Shown: piece by piece, positions 4,931-62,573 of the stretch | How the letters are laid out: every line of letters begins with the position of its first letter | Position numbering within the stretch: the first letter of the stretch is position 1 | DNA from: Hemiscyllium ocellatum | Taxonomy: Eukaryota | Assembly (NCBI RefSeq): GCF_020745735.1 | Contig: NC_083417.1 | Coordinates: forward strand, 72,602,001-72,666,000 | Length of the DNA: 64,000 nt | Reading direction: 5' to 3' | The notes under the pieces: generated by a model | Seen by the model: the letters and a program-made list of their open reading frames with translations, nothing else | Told to the model about the DNA's origin: nothing | Database searches by the model: none | Made by a program: the position numbers and the translations under genes

Positions 4931-5409
4931 AAAATATGATGCTGGAAAAACACAGCAGGCCAGGTCGAGGAGCAGGTGAATCGATGTTTCAGGAATGTTT
5001 AGTCACTTGGATTCAGATATTAGGTAAAGCAATTAAAATAGAGAGTGCCTCAATGAATTAGTGCAAGTGCAATGGATTTTGAAAAAGTAGAATTGTGGAT
5101 GTTTCATACCCTGAGCTCTAATCGAATCTTAATTACTGTTATATGGTGTCATTGTTTTCTGAGTTTTTCCCCTATCTGAGCATATACTACCATTTCATGA
5201 TGCCTTGGTCTTGGAGCCTTCTGTAAATTGTTCATAGTTAGTGCAGCATAAGGTGTCATCGTATCAGTTATTCCCTGTATGAGTTGAAAAAAAACTATAT
5301 AAATGTAAGTTTACAACTATATCTATGTCTGTGTCTCTTTCTACCACTTTAAGTTTAAAATTGCTGGGGTCAACCGGACGAGGAATTCTAATTATGGATA
5401 CCAATATAT

Positions 5410-5855: not shown

Positions 5856-8369
5856 ACAATAAAATAGATACAAAATCTACAAAATCTCCCGGAAGCATGT
5901 TTACTAAATGTCAGTAATAAACAAAACAGGGGTGTGTTATTTGGCCCTTGATTCATCCGCAGTGATTTTCCAAACAATAGCTTTAATTACTTAAGTGCCT
6001 AAACCTTAGATACATTTCTTGAGTCTAGGTAACGAGTGAACATCCAAAGTTCTATATGGCACAAAGTCCCTATCATTCTAGACTTTTTGAACAAAGAAAT
6101 ATCTCTACTTCTCAATATAAATCTATGAATAAAACCCATCCAAGGCAAAAAAAAAGCCCTTGCATCAAGTCTGTCAAATTAGCTACAAACCAAACACTTT
6201 TCAACTCGATCATGTTATAGTCATCAAATCACTAAGAAATGTTGGCCCACTCTACACAATCTTTCATACTAAAACTATCCATTTATTTCAAGAACCGGCC
6301 TCATTTACATGAGTTGATTCCACCAGTGAAAAACATGACCTGCATTAGACAGGGCAGTAAATCCTCAATTTTGTCACAAACATGGTCTTATCTACGCAAT
6401 ACACAAATGCCAGTTGTGCGAAGACATCTTTGATGATCTTCTACAAGACCGTTATGTGTAAGGTAATATTCTATTCTCCCCTGTAATTGATGCTGATCAT
6501 GCATGAGAACTTCCTATAATTGAGCTGTGATGAGAAGAACATTCTTTGAGCTGGAAATGTTCTTCCTTTGGTCGTGAACATACTAATTAAGAATTTGTAC
6601 AGAACAGCAAGTTTGCTATTGCCGCTTATGAACGGTAACTGCTGCAATGTGCTTAGTCTATCTGTGGCACTGTGGGAATCGTAACTTGATGTTATTGGAA
6701 AACTGCGACTTCATGCCAACAAATTTATTTGAGTTGACTTCACGAGATGGGAAATGATGGACAAGTAAGCCTCAAGTTTAAAGGAAGCTTCTTCATAAAT
6801 TCTTAACATTGTAGTTAACAGAAGGAATCAGTCAATTCAATCCAAAGAGTTGGAGGCTGAAATTTTCCGTATTTTTCTAAACTCACAAATGTCTCACATG
6901 ATCTGATTTGAACAGAAATAAAACAAGAACAATCTTCTATTAGATGTTGCCTGCTGTTCTTGACATCACGAGCCACTTCTTCAGTCTAGCACAGGATGCA
7001 TAAAAAAGTCATAAAATTGCTGTCGTCAAAATGCAACATTCAGAAAAACTTTCTATTAATGCTGTATCTGGAAACATTTACTGGTAATGGCAACTATCAT
7101 TGTCAATTCCTGCTTGAATGGTAAAGTTGGACTTGTAAGTAAACGTCAGCTGGAGGAAAAAAGCCAATGACTGTGTTTTGGACTATGCTACATTCAAACT
7201 AAGCACATTACAGGAGTTTCTTTTCTTAAGAAGCAAAAGTGAACATTCTGTTCTGTACAAACGCTTACTTAGTATGTTCACAGTCAAAATATTACAACTA
7301 CATTAGGCACCATCTGACCTATTGATGTCTTTGTTTTAATCCTGTGTCACTGAATACAATATGTTCTGCTTTGCATAAATAATTATGGCAGCAAAATAAA
7401 ATATGGCCATTGCATTAAATGAGATTTGGTTCTGTACAGTTATGTTTTGTGTAAAAGAACTTGCCTTATGTTCATCATTACTCGATTTTTCATCATTGGA
7501 TTTCACTACTTGGGCAAGAAAAAAAGGTTTAAAATTAATAGCAATCCAGGAAATGCATTTCTGCAAAGCTTAACGTAAATAATAACATAATCGACGTATC
7601 ACAATTTTTAAATGACATTGGCCCAGATTTTCCAGTGCCAGACAATTGACATTTCATCATGGATGGGAGCTGAGCATGAAGACTTAGTGGACCGCTCAAT
7701 ATAATAGATTCTAAAAGAATTGGCAGGAAATTGAAGATTCCACTGGGCAATTTCTCTACACTTAGAACCCTCTGAAAGAGTCCACTTAAATAGAATTTGG
7801 AGATATCTGATTAAATTAAGTACAGATTATTGCATCAAACCTTGCACTATTGCACTCCAACTCATGAAAATTTATACAACTGACCCCTTACTTCTCTCAC
7901 CCACGCGCCAGGCAACATTTGCTCTGACATCCTCACCAAAAATCACCTTCCTCTACCTGGTACCTAACACCTTGCTGGCCTGTAGAAATGACAAAACCCT
8001 GATGTTTTCTGCACTAGCCCCTCCTTCACTGCCTTGCTTTTGTTTGTTCCAACCCAGAGAACACCCTTTCCCCACAATGGGCCTAATGGGACTCTCCTGC
8101 AGGATGCTGCATGTTCTTATAATTTCTGAAGCTGATCTGACTCCCCACCAATAAAGCAGGGCCTGCCCATTCCCCCTGACTAAACCTCATGTACCCCTTC
8201 CCCCAAACCCAGATTCATCACCCATTTTTCCCTACTGCAGACATAGCTCCAGTTCTCCCTCTCTGGACAGACTCATTGAGTCATACACCGTGGAAACAGA
8301 CCCTTCAGTCCATGCCAATCAAGTTTCCCAAACTAAGCTAATCCCACAGCCTGCATTTCACCCAAATCC

Positions 8370-9946: not shown

Positions 9947-10057
9947 CTATACTTTTCTTTGCTGCGTATCGTTTCACTATGATGAGGCTGAGCACCAATA
10001 ATATCATTCCACCTGATACATTTGCAGAAATCATCAAATACTTTGTGATCGCACGAT
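9947..10057 (-). CDS. candidate transmembrane exon (uncharged TM) of VJ-C1 receptor gene A
   Basis: Acceptor GTTGTTTTAG, donor G|GTAGGA, 111 nt, phase 1-1, in frame with C1 exon 20233. Encodes (D)RAITKYLMISANVSGGMILLVLSLIIVKRYAAKKSI(G): a hydrophobic stretch followed by a basic stop-transfer. Confidence 0.6.
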
Positions 10058-11599
10058 CTAAAACAACCAAATCACAAATATCAATTAACATTGCTTACTA
10101 TTCGTATCAGTTAACATCTGAGCAGAAAGTTAGGGTACATTAAATCATTTAGTCGTGTCTTAATGGAGTGAACATTCAACTACATTCTACTTCCCTTTGG
10201 ATTTTCAGGCTGTGATAACAATCTTACATTATTTGTTTGAAGTCCTCGTTTTTTGAAGTGAACTTGCAGAGAATATAAATCGTGGTGAGTGTTTTCTCAA
10301 TCTCCTGGAACTCTTGAGATTGGAGTGGCACATGAAACATCCATGGTTTTACTGTAGAAAGACTACTGGACCGTGTTGAGAAAAACCAATGTCAGGACAA
10401 ATGCCTGTGGGAACCATCTGCTCGTGAGACATTCTCTGCCAAACACTAGGGTTAAGGCCCAATCTCAAATGTATCTCATTCAGATCCTGAATGAGGCGTC
10501 CACTTGGATAACTATCTCAAAACCCCCTCCAATGATTCACCGGCACTCGCTTGCCCACCATTGGTGCACTGCCACACAAAATAGTGCATAATTCTCTTTA
10601 AAAGATGGAAATGTCATCTCAAAAGTCAAGACTAATATTTGTGGTACATTGTGGCCAGAACAACTGCAATGTATTGATGTGAGAAAAAGCATTGCACATC
10701 CTGTCGGTAAAATTTCTTCCTCTTCAACAAAAATCAATGGCTAAGTCTAGCAATGATCATATAATTAAAGAAAGGACATTTCTGAAATCCGGTAAACTCT
10801 CCTTAGCAACACTAGCCACAAGGTGCTAGTTGAGAAAGAATGGACCCAGCTCTGAGAGGCGCACCTCCGGCTTCACTGTAAACATGCTACTTTATCCTTA
10901 TGGCAATATACCATTTTGGGCTCCACAGCTAATGAAATGGTTATACGAGTTGTGGTCATAAGCCCATGAAATAGAAAATGAGGATTGATTTAAACTTTGA
11001 ATGAGAGAAAAGAAAATGAAAATAAAATAAAAACGACAATTAAAAGTGATGAGTCAACCCTGCATCATTTTAGCCCATGGACTTCATTTAAAGCAGAGAC
11101 CTCCACACCAGAGAGAGCATCCTGAGACACAGCAAAAGGTGTTGAACATAGCCTTGTGCAACAAAGCAAAAGTCATCTTCTTACAGCAATGAACTCTTTC
11201 AAACAAAGTAGATTCTGCAAGGGACCAGTGGAGAAATATTTTGACAGAAAGTGGTGCTGAACAGAAGTTCATACTTTAAACAGTGTTAGAATGCAATGGG
11301 ATTTCCTAGGCGTCAGTGTATCAAAGGACTGAGCAGCAATATCAGCAGAGCAATTTTTGAAGGCCACGATTGATAGGATCATTGGTAATTGTGATAGTGT
11401 ATACATACTGTAAGACAGTAGAGGACAACAGGATGAATATAAAGACTGACATCTTCAAACCGAGCCATTTAATGCACATAGCTGTGTAATGTGCACTTTG
11501 TATTAAGTAAATCAGAGATACAGTGTGATTTAATTGCATCATTCCGAGATGCATGCAAAGTCAATTGAAACTGAGGATGCAGTTTCATAAGATTTGCGA

Positions 11600-12030
11600 T
11601 GTCTGGTAAAGTAAGATGCTCTCGGATGCTCATGGAATTCTTTAACTTGCGTCGGAGTAACATTGAGTACAAAATCATGGAAGTCATATACAAATTACAG
11701 GTTAGTTCTCTGATGCAATATTATGTACAATTTAAGACACCAGAATTTCACAAGGATGTCTTTACTTGTACAGCAGACAGAAATGGTTCAAAATGATCAG
11801 TGATTCAGGTCATTTAAGGAATTTGAGACTGGAAAGGTTAGCATGAGATCAAAAATTTTTAAGAGATTGGTAAAAGGATATGGAATCATGAACATTGATC
11901 GATTGAGTAAAGTGGAATAACATCCATGCAACCAATGCATTCAAAATATTCACAAAGATGCACAAATTAAGTGAGGAGAACTATTTTCTTAAGGAGCTCA
12001 GGAAGATGCAGAAAGTTCTCACATGAAAAG
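11600..12030 (+). mobile_element. very old CR1-like 3' fragment
   Basis: IMEVIYKL..YYVQF...FHKDVF resembles CR1 EVMLQLYK...YCVQFWSP..RKDV. Confidence 0.55.
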
Positions 12031-12066
12031 TTTTTGGAAATGATTTACATTAAAAATGCAGAGAAT

Positions 12067-12379
12067 GGGGGCGGCACGGTGGCACAGTGGTTAGCACTGC
12101 TGCCTCACAGCGCCTGAGACCCGGGTTCAATTCCCGACTCGGGCGACTGACTGTGTGGAGTTTGCACGTTCTCCCCGTGTCTGCGCGGGTTTCCTCAGGG
12201 TGCTCCGGTTTCCTCCCACTGTCCAAAGATGTGCGGGTCAGGTGAATTGGCCATGCTAAATTGCCCGTAGTATTAGGTAAGAGGTAAATGTAGGGTATGG
12301 GTGGGTTGCGCTTCGGCGGGTCGGTGTGGACTTGTTGGGCCGAAGGGCCTGTTTCCACACTGTAAGTAATCTAGTCTAA
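12067..12379 (+). mobile_element. HE1-type V-SINE (young copy)
   Basis: Near-identical to 802-1114. Confidence 0.9.
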
Positions 12380-13599
12380 GTGCTTGAATCTGTGTTTTCG
12401 GTGGACTAATTTGTTGAGGTACAAATGGCACATAGTGGTATGGGAGTAAATCTGGCACCCCATTCAAAGTACCACACTGGTATGATGGACCAAATATGCT
12501 TCAGGACTCTTGGATTCTATGGATGAACTTGCTTTTTATGTTAGCATCCATGCATTCGAAGTTTGTGTAAAGGTTTGTAGCTCGGGTGATGGTTGCAGTT
12601 GTTGTGGACATGTTCACTGAGCTGCAAACCAATTTGCCAGCCCGCTGAACATTCTCACAGCAACTACACTCATTCATTCATGATGGAGGGCGCTATGTGT
12701 TCTCACGCTGATTACGACAATTACATTATGATGTCGAGGTGCTGGTGTTGGACGGGGGTGGGCAAGGCCAAAAGTCACAAACACCAGATTATAGCCATAC
12801 AGGATTGTCTTGTTATAGTTTGTGAGCTGAGCAATGTTGTTTATCCCAATTGCAGTTCTGGTGATACTCTTAAAATGAATGAAATTGACATTTGTCATTC
12901 AAAAATTTGATCCCATGAAAGGGTTTGCACTACAGGGACAGGCTAAATAAGCTGGGGCTGTCTTCCCTGGAGCATCAATGCCTATGTTTCCAACGTAGAC
13001 TGGTCCCAAAATAGTATACAAGAATCTTTTTAGATGTTTTATGAAAAGCCTATCATTTCAGCGCATCTACTGTAGCCAAACCTGGGACCAGTACCTCTGC
13101 TCTAACTGATCTTAATTAAGCATTGGGTTTATAAATGTCAACTTTATGTCAGGTCCTCCAGGATTCAAATTGATAACAAAATCTTCACGTAATGACTTTG
13201 TAAATGACAGTGTCTTGAATATTTGAGATTAATGGATGACACAAAAGGTATTGATGATCAGCTAGTATGCATTGCTGACTGCTGGAGCTGATGTTAAAAC
13301 CATACAGGTTACCATTTACAATTGACAGACACTTACATTTGTAATTACAAATGGAATATTCATTTTGTCAAAACAGCAGGGAGAGGCAGATATGGTAGAA
13401 CCTCAAGATGCATATTTAGCTGGCTTTGTAGGTGCCAATTTAAGAATCCAAGGTTTAAAAAAAATCCCCAAAGAATTGGGAATGCTGGAAATCAGAAATA
13501 AAAACAGAAATTGTTGGAAAAACTCAGAAGGTTGGCAACATCTGTGGAGAGAAAGAAGAGTCAACGTTTCAGCTCCAGAGATTTTTTTACAGACAAGAT

Positions 13600-14320
13600 G
13601 CACAGTGTATCACTCCGCAGGCATTGAACATTGAGTGCAGGTTCATAGTTCCTTGGAAGTGGAGCCACAGGTAGGTAGAATAGTGAAGAATGCGTTTGGT
13701 ATGCATTCCTTTATTGGTCAGAGCATTGTGTACAGATCATGTTGTGACTGTACAGGACATTGGTTTGGCTACCTTTGGAATATTGCGTGCAATTCTGGTC
13801 TCCTTTCTATCGGAAGGATGTCGTGAAACTTGAAAGGGTTCAGAAACAATTTACAAGGATGTTGCTAGCATTGGAGGATTTGAGCTATAGGGAAAAGTTA
13901 AATAGGCTGGAGATGTTTTCCCTGGAGCATCGGAGGCTAAGGTGTGATCTTATAGAGGTTCATAAAATCATGAGGGGCATGGATAGGATGAATAGACAAA
14001 CTCTTTTCCCTGGGGTGGGCGAGTCCAGAACTGGATGGAAAGTTTTAGAGTGAGAGGGGAAAGATATAAAAGAGACCTAGAGGCCAACGCTTTCACACAG
14101 AGGTTGGCACATGTATGGAATGAGCTGTCAGAGAAAGTGGTGGAGGCTGGTAGACTTGCAACATGTAAAAGTAATCTAGATGAGTATGTGAATAGGAAGG
14201 GTTTGGAGGGATTTGGGGCAGGTGCTGGCAGGTGGGACTAGATTAGATTGGGATATCTGGTCCAAAGGACGTGGACTGAAGGGTCTATTTCCGGGCTGTA
14301 CATCTCTATGACTCTATTAA
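13600..14320 (+). mobile_element. CR1 3' end
   Basis: ORFs 13760-14053 (EYCVQFWSPFYRKDVVKLERVQ) and 14035-14241. Confidence 0.9.
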
Positions 14321-14429
14321 AACCAAAGAGTTAGAGGAAACGATTGTGTGCCTGTCATTCAAACATTGTTGAAGTATTAGTCCCAGTTCTATAAATTAAT
14401 GTTAATCATCATGTAAGATCTATGGACAT

Positions 14430-16180
14430 CTACTTGACATCAGTTATCACAGTGGAAGACACCAGCAGCATATCAGAATTTCAATAGATTCTGGAGGCAA
14501 AGGAGAGTGCAGTGGCTGTTACAAGCAAAATGTGCTGTGGAAGCTGAAAGATCTGAAGGAAGATAAATCACCCATACCAGAAGTACAGCCATGAATTCTC
14601 ATGGAGATCATAGAGGCATTTGTGGTGATCGGTCAGGAATCGTTGGACTCAAGGGCAATAGCAAAGGACTGGAAAATAGCTGGAGTTTTACACCTGTTTA
14701 AGGGCAGCACGGTGGCTCAGGGGTTAGCACTGATTCCTCATACCGTCAGGGACCTGGGATTGATTCCATTCTTGGGTGACTGTCTGTATGGAGATTGCAC
14801 ATTCTCCCTGCGTCTGTGTGGGTTTCCTCAGGGTGCTGTGGCTTCTTCCCACAATCTAAAGATGTGCAGGTTAGATAGATTGGGCATGCTAAATTACCCA
14901 TAGCATTCAGAGATGTGTCAATTAGGTGCATTAGTCAGGGATAAATGTAGAGTAATAGGGTAGGGGAACTGATCTGGGTGGGTTACTCCTCGGAGGGTTA
15001 GTATGGACATGTTGGACCAAATGGCCTGTTTCCACATTTTATGGATTCTATGAAGGGAGGTGGGCAACAATTAGCAAACTATAGTCAATATCATGGGGAA
15101 GAATTTAAAATTTTAGATTTTTGAATTCCTTATTAAGGACAAGTTAGCATGGTAACATAAAGCTGAATCACCTGACTTTGTAAGGGGTGGGTCATGTCAG
15201 ATAAATCTATTAGAATTCTTAGCGGAGGTGAAGAGCACGTTCGAGAAAGGAAAGCCAGTGGATGTGATCTATTTGGAGTTTCAGAAGGTGCCACACAGGA
15301 GACTGCTCAATAAGATAAGAGCCCATGGTGTTCAGAGCAAGTTATTGGCTTGGACACAGGATTGGCCGACAGGTAGAAGGTAGAGAACAGAGATAAAAGG
15401 GTGTTCTCCACAATGGCAGCCAGTGACTAGTAGAGTTCTACAGGGGTCAGTGTTGGCATCAATAATATTCATAAACTATATTAACAATCAGGATGGAGGA
15501 ACTAAGATTGTTGATGTCACAAAGATTGCTGGAGTGAAAGGTCGAGTTCAGGAAGCTGGGAGACTGTGGAATGACTTGCACAGGATAGGAGAGTGGGTAA
15601 AGAAATGGCAGTTGGAATACAATACAGAAAAGTGTGAGGTTATGCATTTCAGTGGGAGAAATAGAGGCATAGAAATTTTTTATAAATGGTGAAAGGTTTA
15701 GTAAAAGTGAAACACAAAGGGACTTGCGAATCTGGGTTCTGGATTCTGGTAAAGTTTACATGCATGTTCAGGTGGTAGCTTAGACAGCAAATGCAATATT
15801 AGAAAACATTTTCCGAGGGCTAGAATGCAAGCACACAGATACACTGTTGATCAGCCTTCATTTGGAATCTTGTAAGTAGTTTTGGGCCACGTATCCAGGC
15901 ACGTTTGAGCTGTTGTTGGAAGAGGTCCAGAAGATGGTTACAAGAATGATCCACGTAGAGGACTCTAGGTTTGTACTCTATGGAGTTTAGAAGGATGAGG
16001 GGGCTTTTCATTGTAACGTTTGGGATACTGACAGGCCTGAATACAGTGATTCATTCCACAAGAAGAAGTAATCAGGAGTCAAGAGCACAGTCTCAAAGTG
16101 AAGTACGGAACTGAAATGAGAAGGAATTGTAGCCCGAGGGTGGATACTCTGTAACGCGCGCTGCTGCATAAGGTTTCAGA
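14430..16180 (+). mobile_element. fragmented old CR1 RT region with nested diverged HE1 SINE (14702-15052)
   Basis: QGSVL...FINYINN, WQLEYNTEKCEVMHF. The SINE head/core is recognisable at 14702. Confidence 0.8.
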
Positions 16181-16204
16181 TGCAAAGTCATTGAGTGTAT
16201 GTAA

Positions 16205-16600
16205 GACACATATGCACCATCCTCTACGTGAAAAAGTTTCACCTTATGTATGTGTTTAAATTTTTCCCATCGCATCCTAAACCTATACCCTCTAGTTCTG
16301 GACTTGCCCGCCCCAGGGAAATTTATCCTATCCATGCCTCTCATGATTTTATAAACCTCTATAAGGTCACCCCTCAACCTCCGACACTCGAGTGACACTC
16401 CAGCGGAGAACTGCCTCAGGCTATTCAGCTTATCCAACTAGCTCTACTCTCCAACCCTGGCAACACCCTTCTAAGTCTTTTCTGAACACTTTCAAGTTTC
16501 ACAAGATCCTTCCAATAGGAGGAAGACCAGACATTCACAAAATATTCCAAAAGTCGCCTAGCCAATTTTCTGTAAAACCGCAAATTGACAGGGTTGAGAA
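16205..16600 (-). mobile_element. CR1 3' fragment
   Basis: RRLRGDLIEVYKIMRGMDR...SRTRGYRF (ORF 16093-16437). Confidence 0.85.
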
Positions 16601-16909
16601 CCACGTCAGCAATTATCAAATGCGGAGCAGATGGGCTGAATGGTTGCACACTGCTCCTATATACTATGATCTAAGGTAAATGGATATTTTCATGAATGTA
16701 TGTCTTTTAGGTTTGGAGAAATTGGAGAATTTCAGAAATGCACGTGAGAAAGGAAGAGAATAGCGTAAAAATCTAATCAACATAATAGAAGTGAAAACAT
16801 TTTTGTGTTAGCTGAGACTTCTTCATCAAGAAAATGCGTATTGAATTTAGTTAGGTTTATTTTCACATGTACTCAGATGAGTGCAGTGAAAAGTTCACCT
16901 GCAGCCATT

Positions 16910-19560
16910 GACTGCATTGATCAGTACTGGGACCTACGATGTTGTGGTCATAACAGAGACATGGACTTCACAGGAGCACGAATCGTTGCTGGATGTTCCA
17001 GGGTTTAGATCTTTTCAAAAGAACAGGGATGGGGGAAAAAGAGGCACGAGCCAGTTTCTACCCGACTGTTGTTAGAATACTGAATGGACATAAAAAAACT
17101 CTTAACATTCCTCTGTACCTGTGTTTTCGTTTTTGCCACTGTTTACCTACTACTTACTATCTATGCTACTTAACTATGTGATCTGTCTGTATTGATAGCA
17201 AGACAAACATTTTCACTGTGCCTCAGTAGGTGTGACAACAAATTCAAGAGGAGGGAGTGTAGCATTGTAAATTAGAGAGTCCATCACAGGTGCAGAAAAG
17301 GAGGATTTGTTAACTGTGTCAGTATGGGTGGAACTCAGTAACAGGAAAGGAGTAATCACTTTATTGGTGTTTTCTAAAGACCCAACAATAGCAACAGAGA
17401 CAAGGAAGAATAGGTTGGAAAGCACATCGCAGAAAGGTGGAGACAGAAATATTGTTCTGCCTGACTTCAACTTCCCCAATATTAATTGAAACCTCTTTAG
17501 TGCAGATCGGCTGGATGGAGCTGATTTTGTCAGGTGTGTCCAGAAAGGATTCCTGACTCAATACATAGGTAAAATTAAAGTGGTGCTGGAAAAGCACAGC
17601 AGGTCAGGCAGCGTCTGAGGAGCAGGAAAATCGATGTTTCAAGCAGAAGCCCATCACCATTCCTGATGCTGCCTGACCTGCTGTGGTATTACAGCACCAC
17701 TCTAACCTCGTCTCTGATCTCCAGCATCTGCAGTCCTCACTTTCACCTACATAATATGTCGGCATTCTGACTGTGGGAAGGCCACATTGGATTTGGTGCG
17801 AGGCAATGAGCCAGGCCAGGTGTCAGATCTCTCGGTGGGAGAGCGTTTTGGTGACAGTGACCTCCTCACTTTTGCCATAGCCATGTTGGGGTTGGGGGTT
17901 GGGGAATAGGAACAGACAGTATGGGAAGGTATTTAACTGAGGGAGGAGAAATTACACTAATAGCAGACAGGAACTGTGGAGCAAAAATAGGGAACAATTG
18001 TTCTATGCAAAATGCACAATGGAAATGTGGAGGCTGTTGAAGGAGCACTTGTTGCGAGTGTTAGATAACGTTGCCTCACTGAGACAGGCAAGGAATGGTA
18101 AAGTGAAGGAGCATTGGATGACAGGACAAGGGGAGTTTCTCGTCAAGAGAGTGAAGGAAATATATTTAAAGTTGAGGAAGCAAGGACCTGGCACAGCTTT
18201 AGACAATAACAGGGTATTTTGAAAATAACTCAAAAGTGGACTGAGGAGAGTTAGGAGGGGGCAAGAAAAAGGCTTAGCAGGAATGATTAGTGAAAACCCA
18301 AATGCAGTCTACACATAATATGAGGAACATTTGAATGATCAGAGAGAGATTCGGTACAGATCATGCCTCACAAGCTTTATTGAGTTCTTTGAGGATATGA
18401 TGAGACAAGTTGATGAAGATCGAGCAGTGGATGTGGTGTATATGGATTTCAATAAGACATTTGATAAGGTGCCCCACAGCAGAAGTTTGGAGGTATGAGA
18501 CACAGGGACATGTGGTTGTCTAGATACAGAAATGGCTGGCCAAAAGAAGAAGCTGGAAAGTATTCCAACTGGTGGTTAGTGGCCAGTGGTCTCCTGCAGA
18601 GATCTGTTCTTGGGCCTCTGTTCTCTGTAGCTTTTATAAATGACTTGGATGAAGTGGAAGGGTGGTTTAGTAGGTTTTTCAATGACACAATGTTCGGTTG
18701 TGTTGTAGGTAGTGTTGCGGGTTTTGCAGGCTATAGAAAGATACTGCCAGGATGCAGAGCTAGGCTGAGAAATACCAGATGTATTTTAACCTGGATAAAT
18801 GTGAAGCGATTCATTTTGGAAGATCGAATTTGAATGCTGAATGCAGGGTTAAAGACAGGATTCTTGGCAGAGTGGGAGAGCAACAGGTATTAGGGGTCCA
18901 TGAACCTCAAAGTTGCCGTCCATGTTGATAGGGTTGTTCAGGAGACATATGGCGTTTTGTCTTTCATTAACAGGGGAATTGAGTTTAAGAGCCAAGGGAC
19001 TTTGCGGCTGTTGGAGAAAACCCTGGTTAGACCACACTTGGAATATAGTGTCCAGTTCTAGTCGTCTCATTATAGGAAGGGCATAGATGCTTCAGAGAGG
19101 GTGCAGAGGAGATTTACAAGGTCGCTGCCTAGATTGGAGGGTATATTTTACGAAGAGAGTTTGAGTGAGTTTGGGCTTTTCACACTGGAGAGAAGTTAGA
19201 GAAGTGACTTGACCGAGGTGTGCAACGTAATGAGAGGCACAGACAGAGTAGATAGCCAGAGCCACTTCCCCAGGGCAGGAATGGCTGTCACGAAGGGTCA
19301 TAATTTTAAGGTGATTGGAAGAAGGTACAGGGTAGATTTCAGAAGTAGGCAGGAAGTGGTGGGTGATGAAATGCACTGCCAGCGTTGGTAGTGAAGTCAG
19401 AGACATTAGGGACATTTAAGCGACTTCTGGACAAGCATATGGTTGGCAATAAATTGAGGGATGTGTAGGTTAGGTTGATCTTAGATTAAGATAAATGCTC
19501 AGCACAACATCGTGGGCCATAACGCCTGAATGCTGCTGTACTGTTCCATGTTCTATGTCT
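16910..19560 (+). mobile_element. degenerate CR1 ORF2 (EN to 3' end) with nested short insertions
   Basis: VWVELSNRKG, DFNFPNI, RSVLGPLFSVAFINDL. Ends in TGTTCTATG. Confidence 0.85.
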
Positions 19561-19759
19561 TAGCCATATGTTGCAGAAAAGGTATATATTTCTGATATTT
19601 TCAAGAAAGCGAAAATAAACAGAATCTTCTCCAGGTGAATTCTGATTTTCTGTCTAAAATCAAAGCCTTTGCGCAGAAAATGTCAAATAAAATTTTGATT
19701 ATTTTCTTGAAAAGAACACATTTATCATTATAAAGAGCACTCTACATGGTCCTAGCAAG

Positions 19760-20180
19760 AAAAACGTAAAAGGTTGGGACTTCTTTCTCGGGAGATTAGG
19801 AGGTTGAAAGATGACCTGATAGAAGTTTATAAAATAATGAGGGGTACAGAAATGGTGAAGGGTAGTTGTCTTTTCCCGAGAATGGGCGATTTCAAAACTA
19901 GTGGCACATTTTTAAGTTGAGAGGAGGGAGATTTTAAAAAGGCATGAGGGGCAATGTTTTTACACAGAAGTTGGTTCAAATGTGGAATGAACTTCCTGAG
20001 GAAGTGATGGATGTGAGGGCAATTACATCGATTAAAACACATATGGATAAGTCCATCAATGGGAAATGTTTGGTGGATTATGGACAAGAGCAGGCGGACG
20101 GGACTAGTTTAGTTTGGGATGAGGGTTGGCATGGATTGGTCGGACCTAAGGGTCTGTTTCTGTGTGGTATGATTCTTTGT
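19760..20180 (+). mobile_element. CR1 3' end adjacent to the C1 exon
   Basis: GNVFTQKLVQMWNELPEEV. The same insertion is present next to all three C1 copies (also ~51140-51550 and 59790-60200). Confidence 0.85.
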
Positions 20181-20232
20181 ATCACAGATTTGATGTGCGT
20201 TATTAATGATGTGGTTCCAGTAGAATTCTTAC

Positions 20233-20544
20233 CTGGGTTGCCATTCGTTACGATGTGACTGACCACGGCTGAAATTTGGAGGGTGCTGTGGGATACCATG
20301 CAGGTGTAAACAGTTCTGGCTCGGATTGCCTGTGTTTCTTCCAACCGGCTGTATGCTTCGTATAGTCTGTCGTCTATTGCGCGAATTACTGTACTGATTC
20401 CTGTTGTAGTTTTACTGCCATCTTTGTACCAAGTAAAGCTGATATCACTCGGGTAAAAAGGAGATGTGGAGCATAAAACAGCAAGGGTCACGGATGGATC
20501 TTTTCCAGGCTGCTGAGAGAGAATATTCAGTGGAGTCGGTGGAA
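20233..20544 (-). CDS. Ig C1-set constant-domain exon, receptor gene A
   Basis: Acceptor TTCACTTCCCTAG, donor G|GTAAGA, 312 nt, phase 1-1. Encodes VPPTPLNILSQQPGKDPSVTLAVLCSTSPFYPSDISFTWYKDG...VYTCMVSHSTL, with C1 hallmarks C-x4-FYP, W and YxCxVxH. Confidence 0.93.
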
Positions 20545-21175
20545 CTAGGGAAGTGAACAGGAGGAAAAAAGAAAGTTACCTCGACGTCAGAAGACGATTA
20601 CAACCCAATCTTTTGTTTCGGGCGATTGCTAGGCAGTTACTGTCCAGTTGTGGGGGAAGGTGCTCATAGAGGTGATGGGTGAACAATGCATGCTGTTGGT
20701 GTCGAGACGCGAACACAGCAAAGTATCAAAGGAAACATTAACTCATCCCTGGACAAAGCACGGGCAAGAGAACATGGACCGCTGTTATTACAGACCTCAG
20801 TTTTTCTGTTGGAAATAACTGTCGAGAGGCTCCTGAATTGGATCCATGATGTGCTATCTCCGATGGTGCAATAAGGCAGCTTTGGAAACGACTTAACAAC
20901 AGAGGGGAAAAGTAACTGATCCATAACTGACGCAGAAGCCAACGGAGTCACTTACTTATTGCAAGGCAAAGGCATGTGGAATGAACAGGACATGGCTTCA
21001 GCAGTTTTTAGATTTTAGAAATATCAGCCTTCAAAATTTTGATGTTTACACATTAAAACTACACCAGCACAAAAAAAAAGGTGCCCGGACTGTGGTGCTG
21101 GAAAAGCAGTGCAGGTCAGGCAGCATCCGATGAGCAGGAGAAACGCCGTTTCAGGCACAAAGCCCTTTATCAGGA

Positions 21176-21345
21176 ATGCTGCCCGACTTGCTGTACTTTT
21201 CAAGTCTCCTGCTTCTCGGATGCTACCTGGCCTGCGCTGCTTTTCCAGTTTCGTGCCCCTCGGATGCTCAATGGCCTGCTGTGCTTTTCCAATCTCCTGC
21301 TTCTCGGATGCTGCCTGACCTGCTGTGCTTCTCCAGCACCACACT
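21176..21345 (+). repeat. 44-nt tandem repeat (4 units) derived from the tail of a short Penelope-type element
   Basis: TGCTGCCTGACCTGCTGTGCTTTTCCAGTCTCCTGCTTCTCGGA-like units. 5 units at ~61196-61410 and 3 units at ~53044-53170. Confidence 0.85.
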
Positions 21346-22184
21346 CTTGATTCTATCCGCCAGCATCTGCAATCCTCAACTTTGCTTAAAAATACACCCG
21401 TCAAGTAATGTCATCAGCAAAATTAAACAGACATTGCTGGAGAAACTCAACCGGTCTGGCAGCATCTGTGAAAAAGGCAGGGTTAAAACGTGGGCACCAG
21501 GGAACCTTCTTCTGAACTATCAACTATGAGCAAAGAGGATGTCAAAAATAAATTAACAAATATGATCAAATCGGTGTCACCCGCGACGGGCTATTGCTCT
21601 TCACCAATATCATTGAAATGCCGGAGCAATTTTTTCCAGACACTGGAATCTTTACTGAAAGCAACAAATGCTGGCGATCACAGCGGGTCAGACAGCATCC
21701 GTGGAGAGAGAGCAAGTTTACGTTTAGATGACCCTTGATAAGGACATGTATCTTTTCATCATATTTCAAGAGTGCTTGAGTTTCCTGCTTATGTCCCACG
21801 GCTGTATAATTCAGGTACATTTGCTGACACATCATTCTAAACTATTGAAACACTGAACATGAAGGACAGCAGTCAGCGATGCAATTTAAATGTGGGCATG
21901 TATCAGGAACTGTGGAGATGTCTCCAAGGAGCGCACACACACCGTCTGCCATTCGGACCTGCTTGGACACTATGTCACCCAAAACATACAGCAACGTTGC
22001 TGACTCTCAATAACTCTCCCAGTTGAACAAGGAAACCACTCAGTTCAAGGATAATTGCGGTTGGACAAAAATGTTAACTTGCCATTGAAGAACATACAAC
22101 ATCAAATACATTGTTAATAAATCCTGTAAAGTGAACTTTTCCAAGCACACCTGAGAATCGCTCAACTTTCACTTTCATACATAC

Positions 22185-22505
22185 CCAACACTGTTAAATT
22201 GGACCCTGTTCCGTTTCCAATCAATTTGCCTTGACGGACGATTGTGCAATAGTACATTCCTCTGTCCTGTACATTGACATTGAATATCTGAAGGAAGCCA
22301 CTGTATTTATTTTTGCGGCCAGTTACTTTTCGGTCATCTTGTTCCACGTTGAGATAATGAGGATCACCTTGCTTCCACCAGATTACCTTGACAGCTTGGT
22401 CGTTTTGAAAAGAATGAAGCCAGCACTGGAAGGACACATTTGCACCCACAGGTTCAGTCACGTTCACTGGTAACTGGGTCACTTTATCCCTGTTTATTCC
22501 AGAGA
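22185..22505 (-). CDS. germline-joined VJ-type Ig V-domain exon, receptor gene A
   Basis: Acceptor CTCTTTCTCTAG, donor G|GTATGT, 321 nt, phase 1-1. Encodes VSGINRDKVTQLPVNVTEPVGANVSFQC...VIWWKQG...FLQIFNVNVQDRGMYYC...GNGTGSNLTVL: canonical Cys/Trp, DxGxYYC and a J-like G strand in one exon. Confidence 0.95.
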
Positions 22506-22683
22506 CTAGAGAAAGAGACAGTCACACACAAATTAGCAAGATTAAATAAAAGAGTTAAAAGAGTGCAGTTCAGTAATTGTCTTAAACTGTCCAAAGGAGA
22601 ACAGTACAGAATATATTAAATAAAGACTAAATAAGAGCTCGACTTTATGGAAAGGCAGTATACTGTAGAAAGAGAGAAAATAC

Positions 22684-22738
22684 CTGGGAAAATTGATGTC
22701 TGAAAAAAGAGACAGAAAAGTGCAATACTCAAGAACAT
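22684..22738 (-). CDS. signal-peptide (leader) exon, receptor gene A
   Basis: ACCAACATG start; MFLSIALFCLFFQTSIFP then G|GTATTT (55 nt, phase 1); in frame with the V exon. Confidence 0.85.
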
Positions 22739-23689
22739 GTTGGTGTATTTGCCAGAGAGACAGAGCGTGAACTGGCTGATAATTTGCAAGAAGTTGAAAG
22801 TACAGTTGGACAGATAGTATCAAAGTGCAGCGTAACATCCGGTTCAATGATCTGGACCGTGATTTTATTTTGTTCCTTTTGCTGAAGTTCAGTGCAGCAG
22901 TTCGTCATTCGCTGTGTACGGCTCGAGTTGATCATTCAAGCCAGTATTTCCCTCTGTAGGGGACGTGTGGACTGTATGAGAGAACAAACGTAGAACATAG
23001 AACATAGAACAGTATAACACAGATCAGGCCTTTCAGGCCACGATGTTGTGCCAACCACTGATCCTCATGTATGCACCCTCAAACTTCTGTGACCATATGC
23101 ATGTCCAGTAGTCTGTGTGTTCTTTCAAATTATCACATTTAAAATTCCTAACAGCCCCACCCCCCTCCCACCATCCCCACCCCGCAATATACGAACAACA
23201 CTCTAGGTTGCATATTTATAAAAGATCAATACTTTGCTTCCCCACCTTTCGAGGAAGTGTGATGCGATGCAAAGGTATTGGTCTATCGGTGTGAGAAAAA
23301 GACATTCTCCTCAGTGATGTGTTACACTGAGGACTCTGAGTTTCTGCAACTGCCATTAATTCTCCAATCTCCCTCAATTGTAAATATTCTGGCAACATGC
23401 ACCCTGCCAAGACCCACTTTGGATTCTGTATGTTTCAGTCAATTTGACTTATGCTTCTATAAGCTTCATCTGGACTTTCCAATCGTCATAAATCAATGGG
23501 TCGCTTCGAAATATTATTCTGGTAAATCATCTCTGGCCTGCTCTCAAAGCATGTACATCTTTCCTTAAATAACAAGAACACTATTATATGAACGATGCCA
23601 GATATTATCTCACTAATACCATGTGTACTAAACATAACCTCCTTACTTTTCTGTTTTTCATGAGTGATCTTGCAACCTCCCAAACGGAA

Positions 23690-24410
23690 ATCATGGATGA
23701 ACTGGGAGATCCAATCCATACTGAAGGCCAGGTCAGAGCAGTACAAGTCGGGCAGCTCTGGGCTATAGGGAAAATCCAGCTATGACCTTCAGAAGACCAT
23801 CAGAGATGCAAGATGTAATACAAATCCAAGCTTGACATCCAGACCAACCACACGGACAGCTATCATTTGTGGCAAGGCTTGCATCAGCTTACAAATGAAA
23901 GACAAACAGAATTGCAGGCAATACTGCGCTCCTATTCAATTATCTCACTGTATTCTGTGGTCACTTTGAATTGAAGGTTACTGAAACCATGCCACCTATC
24001 GCAACAGCCTCCGATTCACCTGCTCCCACATACAATGCAGCAGATGGTAGATCAGTTCACTCCTCCCATTGACCAACCCGGTCATATTCACCACCTGTAT
24101 TCACATATCACTACCTTATCACTCCACCCCTCTCTCCATCATAACCCTTCACCCATCTGCTTTATCTACAGCTCCCGCTACTACCACCTCCATTCCGGTG
24201 AGAGGGTTATACTGGAAAGGTTGACTTCTCCAACGTCCTGTCGGAGTTCCTGGCCTTGCATTCAGACCCCGTGCAGACCAACAGGCAGGAGTATACCCAG
24301 AAATGTTTTATCTTTTCTTACTCAGATTTGAAGTCCCCACCTGCTTCAAGAAAATCACCATAATCTATGTACCAAAGGATAATCATGCAATGTGTGTCGC
24401 GGACTATCCA
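23690..24410 (+). mobile_element. Rex1/Babar-like LINE fragment
   Basis: W-M..EI..LL...; ..HLWQGL; VPTCFKKITII-like motifs typical of the Rex1 tether/RT start. Confidence 0.55.
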
Positions 24411-51606: not shown

Positions 51607-51878
51607 CCGTGTTGCCATTTGTTATGATGTGACTGACCGTGGAGGAAATTTGGAGAGTACTGTGGGATGCCATGCTGTTAAAAGCAGTTCTGGCTCGGAT
51701 TGCCTGCGTTTCTTCCAACCGACTGGATGCTTCGTATAGTCTGTTGTCTGTTGCTTGAATGACTGTACTGATTCCTTGTAGTTTTACTGCCACCTTTCCA
51801 GCAAGTAAAACTGATATCCCTCGGGTAAAAGGGAGGTATGGATCATAAAACAGCAAGGGTCACCGTTGGATCTTTCCT
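51607..51878 (-). pseudogene. dead C1 exon of an older paralog
   Basis: Homologous to 20233-20544 but more diverged. First Cys TGC>TGA (51843-51845), frameshift, donor GT>GG (51605-51606), and the 5' end/acceptor replaced by an insertion. Confidence 0.9.
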
Positions 51879-60254: not shown

Positions 60255-60566
60255 CTGGGTTGCCATTCGTTACGATGTGACTGGCCACGGCTGAAATTTG
60301 GAGGGTGCTGTGGGATACCATGCAGGTATAAACAGTTCTGGCTCGGATTGCCTGTGTTTCTTCCAACCGGCTGTATGCTTCGTATAGTCTGTCGTCTATT
60401 GTTCGAATGACTGTACTGATTCCTGTTGTAGTTTTACTGCCATCTTTGTACCAAGTAAAGCTGATATCACTCGGGTAAAAAGGAGATGTGGAGCATAAAA
60501 CAGCAAGGGTCACGGATGGATCTTTTCCAGGCTGCTGAGAGAGAATATTCAGTGGAGTCGGTGGAA
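60255..60566 (-). CDS. Ig C1-set exon, copy B (open frame, splice sites intact)
   Basis: 312 nt; about 5 nt differences from copy A by eye. Confidence 0.85.
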
Positions 60567-62252
60567 CTAGGGAAGTGAACAGAAGGAAAAAAGAAAGTTA
60601 CCTCGACGTCAGAAGACGATTACAGCCCAATCTTTTGTTTCGGGCGATTGCTGGGCAGTTACTGTCCAGTTGTGGGGGAAGGTGCTCATAGAGGTGAGGG
60701 TTGAACAATGCGTGCTGTTTGTGTCGAGACGCGAACACCGCAAAGTATCAAAGGAAACATTAACTCATCCCCGGACAAAGCACGGGCAAGAGAACATGGA
60801 CCGCTGTTATTACAGACCTCAGTTTTTCTGTTGGAAATAACTGTCGAGAGGCTCCTGAATTGGATCCATGATGTGCTATCCCCGATGGTTCAATAAGGCA
60901 GCGTTGGAAACGACTTAACAACAGAGGGGAAAAGTAACTGATCCATAACTGACACAGAAGCCAATGGAGTCACTTACTTATTGCAAGGCAAAGGCACGTG
61001 GAACGTACAGGACGTGGCTTCAGCAGTTTTTAGATTTTAGAAATATCAGCCTTCAAAATTTTGATGTTTACACATTAAAACTACACCAGCAAAAAAAAAG
61101 GAGCCCGGAGTGTGGTGCTGGAAAAGCAGAGCAGGTCAGGCAGCATCCCATGAGCAGGAGAAACGACGTTTCAGGCAAAAAGCCCTTTATCAGGAATGCT
61201 GCCCGAACTGCTGTACTTTTCAAGTCTCCTGCTTCTCGGATGCTACCTGGCCTGCTCTGCTTTTCCTGTCTCCTGGCCCTAGGATGCTCCCTGACCTGCT
61301 GTGTCTTTCCAGTCTCCTGCCCCTCGGATACTCAATGACCTGCTGTGCTTTTCCAATCTCCTGCTTCTCGGATGCTGCCTGACCTGCTGTGCTTCTCCAG
61401 CACCACACTCTTGATTCTAGCCGCCAGCATCTGCAATCCTCACCTTTGCTTAAAAATACACCCGTCAAGAAATGTCATCAACAAAAATAAACAAACATTG
61501 CTGGAGAAATTCAACCAGTCTGGCAGCATCTGTGAAAAAGGCAGGGTTAAAACGTGGGCACCAGGGAACCTTCTTCTGAACTATCAACTATGAGCAAAGA
61601 GGATGTCAAAAATAAATCAACAAATATGATCAAATCTGTGTCACCCGCGACGGGCTATTACTCTTCACCAATATCATTGAAAAAATTGTCGGAGCAAATT
61701 TTTCCAGACACTGGAATCTTTACTGAAAGCAACAAATGCTGGCGATCACAGCAGGTCAGACAGCATCCGTGGAGAGAGAGCAAGTTAACGTTTAGATGAC
61801 CCTGGATAAGGGCATGTATCTTTTCATCATATTTCAAGAGTGCTTGAGTTTCCTGCTTATGTCCCACGGCTGTATAATTCAGGTACATTTGATGACACAT
61901 CATTCTAAACTATTGAAACACTGAACATGAAGGACAGCAGTCAGTGGTGCAATTTAACTGTAGGCATGTATTAGGAACTGTGGAGATGTCTCCAAGGAGA
62001 GCACGCACACCTCCTGCCATTCGGACCTGCTTGGACACTATGTCACCCAAAACATACAGCAACGTTGCTGACTCTCAATAACTCTCCCAGTTGAACAAGG
62101 AAACCACTCAGTTCAAGGATAATTGCGGTTGGACAAAAATGTTAACTTGCCATTGAAGAACATACAACATCAAATACATTGTTAATAAATCCTGTAATGT
62201 GAACTTTTCCAAGCACACCTGAGAATTGCTTAACTTTCACTTTCATACATAC

Positions 62253-62573
62253 CCAACACTGTTAAATTGGACCCTGTTCCGTTTCCAATCAATTTGCCTT
62301 GACGGACGATTGTGCAATAGTACATTCCTCTGTCCTGTACATTGACATTGAATATCTGAAGGAAGCCACTGTATTTATTTTTGCGGCCAGTTACTTTTCG
62401 TTCATCTTGTTCCACGTTGAGATAATGAGGATCACCTTGCTTCCACCAGATTACCTTGACAGCTTGGTCGATTTGAAAAGAATGAAGTCAGCACTGGAAG
62501 GACACATTTGCACCCACAGGTTCAGTCACGTTCACTGGTAACTGGGTCACTTTATCCCTGATTACTCCAGACA
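62253..62573 (-). pseudogene. VJ exon, copy B, with nonsense codon
   Basis: 321 nt, splice sites intact. TGG>TGA at 62488-62490, immediately after the first Cys. Confidence 0.88.

What the first reader, a model, noticed from the sequence alone, without database searches (positions are those of the whole stretch)
9947..22738. Intact non-rearranging VJ-C1 antigen-receptor-like gene hidden across four minus-strand exons
Seen: leader (55 nt), VJ (321 nt), C1 (312 nt) and TM (111 nt) exons have canonical AG/GT ends and join in phase 1 into one open frame (MFLSIALFCLFF...YYC...GNGTGSNLTVL-VPPT...FYP...YTCMVSH...TM). The J-like G strand is in the same exon as V and is followed directly by a splice donor, with no RSS heptamer there. 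Established: C1-set domains are largely confined to Ig/TCR/MHC and a few relatives (SIRP, tapasin, B7H6). Germline VJ domains typify NKp30, SIRP, NITR and the VJ-C1/PRARP-type genes discussed as antigen-receptor precursors. Inference: this is a shark member of such a family, possibly uncharacterised.
Basis: partly seen in the sequence, partly recalled or inferred. Interest (0 to 1): 0.85.

Follow-up and report, generated by a model that had tools for sequence, protein, structure and literature searches.

The report
Shark SIRP-like inhibitory V-C1 receptor gene
This is a real, intact epaulette-shark gene for a small antibody-like surface receptor with a ready-joined V domain, one C1 domain and an inhibitory-type tail. 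It is already a predicted gene in public databases and one ordinary member of a large receptor family found in cartilaginous fishes, not a hidden one-off.

Summary
The leader, VJ, C1 and TM exons on the minus strand have AG/GT ends, join in phase 1 and give an open frame, and there is no RSS.

It matches, residue for residue, RefSeq XP_060693846.1 and XP_060693845.1, "signal-regulatory protein beta-1-like", of Hemiscyllium ocellatum. It has six coding exons. The two extra exons encode a cytoplasmic tail with TPYAAL and a canonical ITIM, VVYAQI. The TM segment is uncharged.

It belongs to a family I found across cartilaginous fishes (sharks, rays, skates, chimaera). Databases label its members SIRP-alpha/beta-like, tapasin-related-like, Ig-lambda-like or NCR3(-ligand)-like. 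Members have long multi-tyrosine tails, or short tails that sometimes carry Arg/Lys in the TM, the pattern of paired receptors.

The modelled V-C1 ectodomain matches SIRP-alpha D1-D2 best (TM 0.71-0.76). The C1 domain is antigen-receptor-like (Ig lambda C, UrIg2).

A 40-kb tandem duplicate at 60-63 kb is a truncated pseudogene, and a third C1 relic lies at 51.6-51.9 kb.

This scan has already found and followed up several paralogues elsewhere in this genome.

Verdict: a genuine but ordinary family member. The family matters for receptor evolution, and I could find no paper on it.

The parts
22684..22738 (-). Coding exon 1: start codon and most of the split leader (55 nt, ends in phase 1).
   Evidence: ATG at 22738 and a GT donor after 22684. 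Identical to residues 1-18 of P0163.
22185..22505 (-). Coding exon 2: end of the leader plus a V-set domain. The J-like G strand (GNGTGSNLTVL) lies in the same exon, and a splice donor follows directly.
   Evidence: Pfam V-set 5.8e-12. AG/GT ends. No RSS. The xGxG(S/T)xLxV motif is conserved across 34 family members.
20233..20544 (-). Coding exon 3: C1-set domain (VPPTPL...FYPSDISFTWYKDG...YTCMVSH).
   Evidence: Pfam C1-set 4.7e-13. Best solved-structure sequence hit is UrIg2 9dmx. With a family profile the best single-domain match is the Ig lambda constant domain, 47 bits.
9947..10057 (-). Coding exon 4: short stalk, uncharged transmembrane segment (ISANVSGGMILLVLSLIIV) and a basic stop-transfer stretch. 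It ends in a GT donor, phase 1.
   Evidence: It aligns to the TM exons of Heterodontus, Amblyraja and Callorhinchus relatives.
7465..7505 (-). Coding exon 5 (41 nt): cytoplasmic linker VKSNDEKSSNDEHK, with a GC (not GT) donor. Isoform X1 uses an acceptor 3 nt upstream (7508), a NAGNAG pair.
   Evidence: Exon boundaries were solved by exact reconstruction of P0163 and P0190. tblastn support.
5149..5274 (-). Coding exon 6: cytoplasmic tail GITDTMTPYAALTMNNLQKAPRPRHHEMVVYAQIGEKLRKQ plus the stop codon. It holds Tyr289 (TPYAAL) and Tyr311 (VVYAQI, ITIM consensus).
   Evidence: It matches the family tail profile at E=1.7e-7 and is the only such match in the window. It aligns to the Heterodontus tail at E=2e-8.
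60255..62804 (-). Tandem duplicate (copy 2), a truncated pseudogene: leader exon 62752-62804 with a 2-nt deletion, V exon 62253-62573 with TGG>TGA just after the first Cys, and C1 exon 60255-60566, still open. It has no TM or tail exons.
   Evidence: No TM or tail match anywhere else in the window.
51611..51875 (-). Older C1-exon relic (about 85% DNA identity over 51133-51875) with a stop, a frameshift and loss of the second Cys.
13460..23932 (.). Copy-1 arm of an approximately 40-kb-period segmental duplication. Its partner arm is 53295-64000, cut by the window end.
   Evidence: Megablast blocks at 93-96% identity. Repeat families D5-D20.

Best explanation
This is the epaulette-shark (Hemiscyllium ocellatum) gene that RefSeq already predicts as 'signal-regulatory protein beta-1-like' (XP_060693845.1 and XP_060693846.1). 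It is a six-exon gene for a 321/322-residue type I membrane protein. The parts in order are: split leader, germline-joined VJ-type V domain, one antigen-receptor-type C1 domain, an uncharged TM segment, and a 55-residue tail with two tyrosine motifs (TPYAAL and the ITIM VVYAQI).

It is the inhibitory-type member of one elasmobranch-wide orthologous lineage. That lineage sits inside a large multigene family of non-rearranging V-C1 receptors in cartilaginous fishes, with long-tailed (multi-tyrosine) and short-tailed (sometimes Arg/Lys in the TM) forms. This is the logic of paired receptors such as SIRP-alpha and SIRP-beta.

Inferred mechanism: the fast-evolving V domain binds an unknown ligand. 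Src-family kinases phosphorylate Tyr289 and Tyr311. SH2-domain phosphatases are recruited and damp activation of the cell that carries the receptor.

Shown here: the gene structure, the domains, the motifs, family membership and the pseudogene status of the neighbouring copy. Inferred, not shown: expression, the ligand and inhibitory signalling.
For: - The exons join in frame with correct splice signals.
- The product is 100% identical to P0163/P0190, that is XP_060693846.1/XP_060693845.1, assembly GCA_020745735.1. The CDS span of 17,590 bp equals 5149-22738.
- Pfam finds V-set and C1-set.
- Family: 66 representatives at E<1e-10 with the V exon alone. Named members come from sharks, rays, skates and chimaera.
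- V tree: this gene pairs with its Chiloscyllium orthologue (100/96). Both sit in a 99/94 clade with Heterodontus, Scyliorhinus, Mustelus, Mobula, Hemitrygon, Amblyraja and Leucoraja.
- The tail is homologous to the first tyrosine pair of the family's four-tyrosine tail.
- Long tails and short tails, some with a charged TM, coexist in the family. P0003 and P0173, which are in or near this subclade, carry a TM Arg.
- The AlphaFold model of V-C1 has pLDDT 89.8. Its best Swiss-Prot structural matches are rat, human and mouse SIRP-alpha D1-D2 at TM 0.71-0.76.
- Language-model neighbours include SIRP-alpha clusters.
- Between the Hemiscyllium and Chiloscyllium orthologues V is 70% identical and C1 91%. 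This fits a ligand-binding V domain under faster change.
Against: - I saw no transcript data. Expression rests on the existence of a RefSeq model with two isoforms and a GC donor.
- The tail has only two of the four tyrosines usual in the family. The first motif (TPYAAL) is ITSM-like, not a canonical ITIM.
- Phosphatase recruitment, the ligand and the expressing cell type are all untested.
- The name 'SIRP beta-like' is automatic. The protein has one C1 domain, not two. Its identity to SIRP-alpha is only about 21% in structural alignment. Orthology to SIRP is not shown.
Confidence: 0.85

Rival explanations
1. It is a member of the shark NCR3 (NKp30) family. That family is a set of divergent, non-rearranging VJ genes reported from nurse shark, so this gene family would already be described in the literature under that name.
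For: - The J region has the G-x-G-x-G-(S/T)-x-L-x-V look that I recall for NKp30 (from memory, not tested).
- A Pristis protein that RefSeq labels 'natural cytotoxicity triggering receptor 3-like' (P0057/P0207) has the same V-C1 build. It falls in a clade that is sister to the 53-row group holding this gene.
- An earlier scan note (s1-210481) called the V domain NKp30-like.
- From memory, Kinlein et al. 2021 (Immunogenetics 73:333) reported eight divergent NCR3-family subtypes in nurse shark.
Against: - This gene is not inside the NCR3-labelled clade.
- It has a C1 domain, an uncharged TM and an ITIM tail. NKp30 as known in mammals is V-only with a TM Arg (my own knowledge).
- No curated NCR3 sequence could be fetched for a direct test.
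- The key paper is not held.
Confidence: 0.3
2. It is a true orthologue, or co-orthologue, of the tetrapod SIRP genes. It would be a primitive SIRP with one C1 domain.
For: - Best structural match is SIRP-alpha D1-D2.
- SIRP-alpha 2wng is among the top sequence hits for the C1 domain.
- The family's four-tyrosine tail, YAxL...YAQ...YAxL...EYAxL, resembles the SIRP-alpha tail as I remember it.
- The family has a paired inhibitory/activating organisation.
- Automatic names and language-model neighbours point to SIRP.
Against: - One C1 domain instead of two. The SIRP definition is V + 2 C1 (PMC12975943).
- The C1 profile scores higher with Ig lambda C and UrIg2 than with SIRP.
- The V domain alone did not bring SIRP D1 into the top 60 solved-structure hits.
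- No synteny data. Only about 21% identity.
Confidence: 0.25
3. It is a relic close to the pre-RAG antigen-receptor ancestor. That would make it a UrIg/UrIg2-type gene or a germline-joined Ig/TCR cluster.
For: - Single-exon VJ with a split leader, as described for UrIg/UrIg2 (PMC12227049).
- The best solved-structure sequence hit for the C1 domain is UrIg2.
- Foldseek against the PDB returns Ig light chains and TCR beta chains.
Against: - UrIg has three and UrIg2 nine or more C1 domains, and neither is reported to have an ITIM tail.
- The per-domain score to UrIg2 is only about 30 bits, no better than to ordinary Ig C domains.
- V similarity to Ig lambda is E about 1e-7, against 1e-29 to SIRP-like family members.
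- No RSS and no separate J.
- The gene is one of many recent paralogues. A tandem copy lies 40 kb away and, by an unchecked scan note, a look-alike 209 kb away.
Confidence: 0.07

Closest known systems
SIRP family (SIRP-alpha, SIRP-beta, SIRP-gamma; paired receptors)
   Same: - N-terminal V-set domain with a J-like G strand, followed by C1-set domain(s).
- Type I membrane protein.
- Inhibitory members carry tyrosine motifs; activating members have short tails and a basic TM residue.
- The V-C1 model superposes best on SIRP-alpha D1-D2 (TM 0.71-0.76).
- Automatic annotation uses this name.
   Different: - One C1 domain, not two.
- Two tail tyrosines here, against the four usual in the shark family.
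- Only about 21% identity.
- The C1 domain is closer in sequence to Ig lambda C and UrIg2 than to SIRP.
- CD47 binding and synteny are unknown.
NKp30 / NCR3 and the shark NCR3 family
   Same: Non-rearranging VJ-type V domain with a Gly-rich J motif. A RefSeq 'NCR3-like' sawfish protein has the same V-C1 architecture and lies in a sister clade of the same cartilaginous-fish family.
   Different: This gene has a C1 domain, an uncharged TM and an ITIM-type tail. It is not inside the NCR3-labelled clade. No curated NCR3 sequences could be compared.
UrIg and UrIg2 (non-rearranging shark antigen-receptor-like genes; PMC12227049)
   Same: Single-exon VJ domain, split leader and C1-type constant domain. 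UrIg2 is the top solved-structure sequence hit for the C1 domain.
   Different: UrIg has VJ + 3 C and is secreted. UrIg2 has VJ + 9-11 C + TM. This gene has one C domain and an inhibitory-type tail. It is a multicopy family member, not a single conserved locus.
Teleost NITRs (novel immune-type receptors)
   Same: Germline VJ-type V domains on inhibitory (ITIM) or activating (charged TM) receptors, in multigene families.
   Different: By my own knowledge NITRs lack a C1-set domain. Teleost sequences that look like NITRs to me (only one was looked up, an uncharacterised catfish protein) form a distant long-branch group outside the cartilaginous-fish family.

Membership tests
SIRP family | [quoted passage not shown] | tested here: met
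   Pfam V-set 5.8e-12. The J-like G strand is conserved in the family.
SIRP family | [quoted passage not shown] | tested here: not met
   There is only one C1 exon and domain between V and TM.
SIRP family | Cytoplasmic ITIMs (alpha form), or a short tail with a basic TM residue (beta form) | tested here: met
   Tail motifs TPYAAL and VVYAQI, with an uncharged TM. Relatives with a TM Arg/Lys and short tails exist. Phosphatase binding itself was not testable.
SIRP family | Ectodomain fold and domain arrangement like SIRP-alpha D1-D2 | tested here: met
   Foldseek against Swiss-Prot AlphaFold models puts SIRP-alpha first. Rat, human and mouse give TM 0.71-0.76 by query.
SIRP family | Binds CD47; orthologous locus (synteny) | not testable with these tools
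   No binding assay is possible. No annotated gene lies within 10 kb either side, and no DNA was returned for the chromosome.
NKp30 / NCR3 | A single VJ-type V domain as the whole ectodomain | tested here: not met
   A C1-set domain follows the V domain.
NKp30 / NCR3 | Basic TM residue for adaptor pairing, and a short tail | tested here: not met
   The TM segment ISANVSGGMILLVLSLIIV has no charged residue. The tail is 55 residues with two Tyr motifs.
NKp30 / NCR3 | V domain groups with NCR3 in a phylogeny | tested here: inconclusive
   The only 'NCR3-like' sequences available carry automatic labels. They form a sister clade within the same cartilaginous-fish family. No curated NCR3 was available.
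UrIg / UrIg2 | Single-exon VJ with a split leader | tested here: met
   Feature as described in PMC12227049.
UrIg / UrIg2 | Three (UrIg) or nine or more (UrIg2) C1-type domains | tested here: not met
   One C1 domain.
Rearranging or germline-joined Ig/TCR cluster | RSS-flanked V and J segments, or closest relatives among IgL/TCR | tested here: not met
   No RSS. The closest relatives are SIRP-like V-C1-TM models at 1e-29 to 1e-20, against about 1e-7 for Ig lambda.
Cartilaginous-fish V-C1 paired-receptor family (no published name that I could find) | V with WWKxGE...YYC...GNGTGSxLxV, C1 starting VPPTPL with FYP...W.K.G...YTCLVSH, TM, and a tail built on YAxL / VYAQ units | tested here: met
   Alignments A1-A4. 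Tree placement with 99/94 support inside an elasmobranch-wide clade.

The most novel reading that the evidence does not exclude
This family in cartilaginous fishes joins an NKp30-like or SIRP-like germline VJ domain to a C1 domain most like Ig lambda C and UrIg2. It may be a surviving descendant of the common stock that gave rise to SIRP, NKp30 and the antigen-receptor chains. On that reading NKp30 in bony vertebrates lost its C1 domain, and SIRP-type paired inhibitory/activating signalling predates the split between cartilaginous and bony fishes. The present gene would then be a convenient intact representative of one elasmobranch-wide lineage.
Probability: 0.15. Interest if true: 0.65.

Novelty: new member of a known kind. 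Interest (0 to 1): 0.3.

Why it matters
By itself the gene adds little. It is an already predicted member of a big receptor family, and other members in this genome have been followed up in this scan.

The family matters more. It shows that cartilaginous fishes keep many non-rearranging V(J)-C1 receptors with SIRP-like paired inhibitory/activating signalling. Their C1 domains are close to those of antibodies. This bears on how antigen-receptor-type domains were used before, or alongside, RAG-driven rearrangement.

The databases give these genes a jumble of misleading names: SIRP, tapasin-related, Ig lambda, MHC class II beta, NCR3 ligand. A proper classification would be useful.

Tried and rejected
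1. Germline-joined IgL/TCR cluster: rejected. There is no RSS, the gene has a TM and an ITIM tail, and its nearest relatives are SIRP-like models.
2. Direct TM-to-terminal-exon splice through the weak acceptor at 5294, my first guess: rejected. The RefSeq protein showed a 41-nt intermediate exon and the cag|GGA acceptor at 5274.
3. A further ITIM exon downstream ('SNYSRI' near 2105): rejected. The family tail profile matches only the exon at 5149-5274.
4. TM and tail exons for copy 2 or for the C1 relic: none found.
5. AlphaFold of the V exon from a single sequence gave pLDDT 60, and I did not use it.
6. The profile search of the V alignment against solved structures was swamped by multi-Ig proteins such as titin and Robo. 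It says nothing about NKp30 versus SIRP.
7. The third word-index search, with a family alignment, returned only 15 proteins, all from cartilaginous fishes. It did not extend the taxonomic range.
8. Papers that might already describe the family are not held: Kinlein 2021 PMC8273117, Flajnik 2012 PMC3709836, Flajnik 2023 PMC10530332.
9. Searches for PRARP and for shark SIRP gave nothing relevant.
10. The chromosome DNA around the gene could not be fetched, so there is no synteny.
11. MHC linkage: the eight MHC-related scan notes returned (of 135 that fit the query) all lie on other sequence pieces. That is not a test.

Full report
**Observation**

- leader: 22684-22738, 55 nt
- VJ: 22185-22505, 321 nt
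- C1: 20233-20544, 312 nt
- TM: 9947-10057, 111 nt

Every internal exon has an AG acceptor and every exon a GT donor. All junctions are in phase 1, and the join is a single open frame of 266 codons. Pfam gives V-set at 5.8e-12 and C1-set at 4.7e-13.

The G strand (IGNGTGSNLTVL) is in the V exon and is followed directly by the donor. Aligned without a gap it fits the J pattern xGxG(S/T)xLxV. No CACAGTG heptamer lies in or beside the exon, and no heptamer-spacer-nonamer occurs in the window.

**The gene is longer, and already annotated**

The TM exon ends in a splice donor, so the gene had to continue. A search of 1.84 billion representative proteins with the V exon gave 66 hits below 1e-10. The best are V-C1(-TM) proteins of sharks, rays, skates and chimaera. 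Their automatic names include 'tyrosine-protein phosphatase non-receptor type substrate 1-like' (that is, SIRP-alpha-like), 'signal-regulatory protein beta-1-like', 'tapasin-related protein-like' and 'immunoglobulin lambda-1 light chain-like'.

Searching with a full-length relative returned P0163, 'signal-regulatory protein beta-1-like isoform X2 [Hemiscyllium ocellatum]', 321 aa.

Exact reconstruction fixes those two exons:
- Exon 5 is 7465-7505, 41 nt, encoding VKSNDEKSSNDEHK. It has a GC-AG intron on its 3' side. Isoform X1 uses an acceptor 3 nt upstream.
- Exon 6 is 5149-5274, encoding GITDTMTPYAALTMNNLQKAPRPRHHEMVVYAQIGEKLRKQ and the stop.

The accessions are XP_060693846.1 and XP_060693845.1, in assembly GCA_020745735.1, on an 84,986,831-bp chromosome. 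The recorded CDS span of 17,590 bp equals 5149-22738. No other gene is called within 10 kb either side.

**Protein features**

- A hydrophobic leader split between exons 1 and 2.
- Two Cys pairs: C46/C105 in V and C150/C207 in C1. There is no extra stalk Cys, so no obvious interchain disulfide.
- Five N-x-S/T sites, four in the V domain (two of them in the J strand) and one at the start of the TM segment.
- An uncharged TM segment.
- A 55-residue tail with Tyr289 in TPYAAL (ITSM-like) and Tyr311 in VVYAQI (ITIM consensus).

A profile of family tails matches exon 6 at E=1.7e-7 and nothing else in the window. In the family alignment the usual tail has four tyrosines, in the order YAxL, VYAQ, LTYAxL, TEYAxL. 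This gene keeps only the first pair and then runs to a stop.

**The family**

Among the proteins fetched, 95 carry both the V and the C1 domain. The consensus reads WWKxGE...DSGVYYC...GNGTGSxLxV | VPPTPLKI...FYPE..LTWYKNG...GLYEASS...VYTCLVSH.

In a maximum-likelihood tree of 113 V domains:
- This gene pairs with its Chiloscyllium plagiosum orthologue (100/96). That orthologue is 80% identical overall, with V 70% and C1 91%.
- Both sit in a clade with 99/94 support that holds Heterodontus, Scyliorhinus, Mustelus, Mobula, Hemitrygon, Amblyraja and Leucoraja sequences. This is an orthologous lineage older than the shark-ray split.
- A clade that includes a sawfish protein labelled 'natural cytotoxicity triggering receptor 3-like' (P0057/P0207) is sister to the 53-row group containing this gene.
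- Teleost sequences that look NITR-like to me lie outside on a long branch.

Across the family, 56 proteins have a TM and a tail of 40 residues or more, mostly with 1-5 tyrosine motifs. Another 22 have short tails, several with Arg or Lys in the TM. These include P0003, which is in this subclade, and P0173, a close Heterodontus relative that was not in the tree. That is the pattern of paired inhibitory and activating receptors.

**Relation to known families**

With a 40-sequence alignment AlphaFold2 models the V-C1 ectodomain at pLDDT 89.8.
- Against Swiss-Prot AlphaFold models, the best matches are SIRP-alpha of rat, human and mouse and SIRP-beta-1 (TM 0.71-0.76 by query). Skint, PD-L1, B7-H6, butyrophilins and CD276 follow at 0.52-0.65.
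- Against the PDB, Foldseek lists Ig light chains and TCR beta chains. TM is only about 0.4 because the elbow angle differs.

By sequence:
- The C1 domain's best solved relative is UrIg2 (9dmx; 7.5e-18 summed, 29.8 bits for the best domain). IgA/IgG chains and SIRP-alpha 2wng follow.
- With the family profile the best single-domain match is an Ig lambda constant domain at 47 bits.
- The V domain alone reaches only about 1e-7 with Ig lambda V domains.
- Protein-language-model neighbours are unnamed V-C1 clusters, then 'kappa light chain-like', then SIRP-alpha clusters.

SIRPs are defined as V + two C1 domains, with ITIMs in alpha or a basic TM residue in beta (PMC12975943). This gene has one C1 domain. 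It works like a SIRP-type paired receptor, but it cannot be filed as a SIRP.

UrIg (VJ + 3 C, secreted) and UrIg2 (VJ + 9-11 C + TM) share the single-exon VJ and split leader, but not the architecture (PMC12227049).

VJ-type non-rearranging V domains are already recognised in CD79, NITR, SIRP, CD8, NKp30 and PRARP (PMC11599192).

I could not read the paper on the shark NCR3 family (Kinlein et al. 2021). It may already describe relatives of this gene. That is the main uncertainty about the family's status in the literature.

**Surroundings**

The window holds a segmental duplication with a period of about 40 kb. Block 13460-23932 matches 53295-64000 at 93-96% identity.

Copy 2 keeps the leader, V and C1 exons, but:
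- it has a 2-nt deletion in the leader;
- it has TGG>TGA right after the first Cys of the V domain;
- it has no TM or tail exons.

Copy 2 is therefore a truncated pseudogene. Its V and C1 exons differ from copy 1 at 11 of 633 positions (1.7%), against 3.5-4.6% substitutions in the flanking and intronic DNA. So it was either constrained until recently or homogenised by gene conversion.

An older C1 relic lies at 51611-51875. It has about 85% DNA identity over 51133-51875, a stop, a frameshift and a lost Cys.

**Mechanism**

Shown: a complete type I receptor gene with a V-C1 ectodomain, an uncharged TM and an ITIM-bearing tail, in a family that also has activating-type members.

Inferred from established knowledge of ITIM receptors such as SIRP-alpha: ligand binding by the V domain, tyrosine phosphorylation, recruitment of SH2 phosphatases, and inhibition. 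The ligand, the cell type and expression are unknown.

**Earlier scan notes**

Several paralogues elsewhere in this genome were already flagged and followed up. The notes are s1-210481, s1-191580, s1-203472, s1-236397 and s1-198131; the last lies 209 kb from this window. Their verdicts were much the same: real genes, a large family in cartilaginous fishes, labelled SIRP-like.

My own tests agree. I could not confirm the claim in s1-236397 that the family extends to lungfish, reptiles and birds. The non-chondrichthyan hits I examined (snake, frog, catfish; E 1e-8 to 1e-6) have other architectures.

**Verdict**

This is an ordinary, already predicted member of an interesting and poorly described receptor family.

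Noticed in passing
window 46291-49702 (+): An apparently intact LINE. ORF1 (175 aa) has a GDSL esterase/lipase domain. An 857-aa ORF2 has apurinic-type endonuclease and reverse-transcriptase domains. Degraded copies of the same element lie at about 1820-2959 and in both arms of the duplication.
   Followed up: partly
window 7459-7464 (-), intron after exon 5: The RefSeq model uses a GC-AG intron (CATAAG|GCAAGT). The exon-5 acceptor is a NAGNAG pair, which gives isoforms X1 and X2. The Chiloscyllium plagiosum model (P0165) instead reads through this donor into HKASFFYTKYNCI-stop, and so lacks the ITIM exon. Either that species has a short-tail isoform or the model is wrong.
   Followed up: partly
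window 845-1096, 12117-12368, 14750-15001, 35134-35385: A repeat family of about 250-300 bp with 61-96% identity between copies, probably a SINE. One automatic Scyliorhinus protein model (P0001) appears to read into a copy of it at its C-terminus (tblastn hits).
   Followed up: no
window 53000-53360: This is the lower boundary of the 40-kb duplication (53295 matches 13460). It abuts a repeat also present at 21176-21475 and transposon-like ORFs at 51991-53228. Another first-stage note (s1-223407) reads it as a fusion breakpoint creating a chimeric gene. I saw no coding exon there.
   Followed up: partly
proteins P0055, P0207, P0028, P0204 (not in the window; P0055 is on the same chromosome): A highly conserved V-C1 subgroup (YYCRVEGExTGNGTGT, TM PWWIYLCGG) has a long basic tail without tyrosines. 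One isoform is labelled NCR3-like by RefSeq. This suggests that NKp30-like V domains in cartilaginous fishes are attached to a C1 domain.
   Followed up: partly
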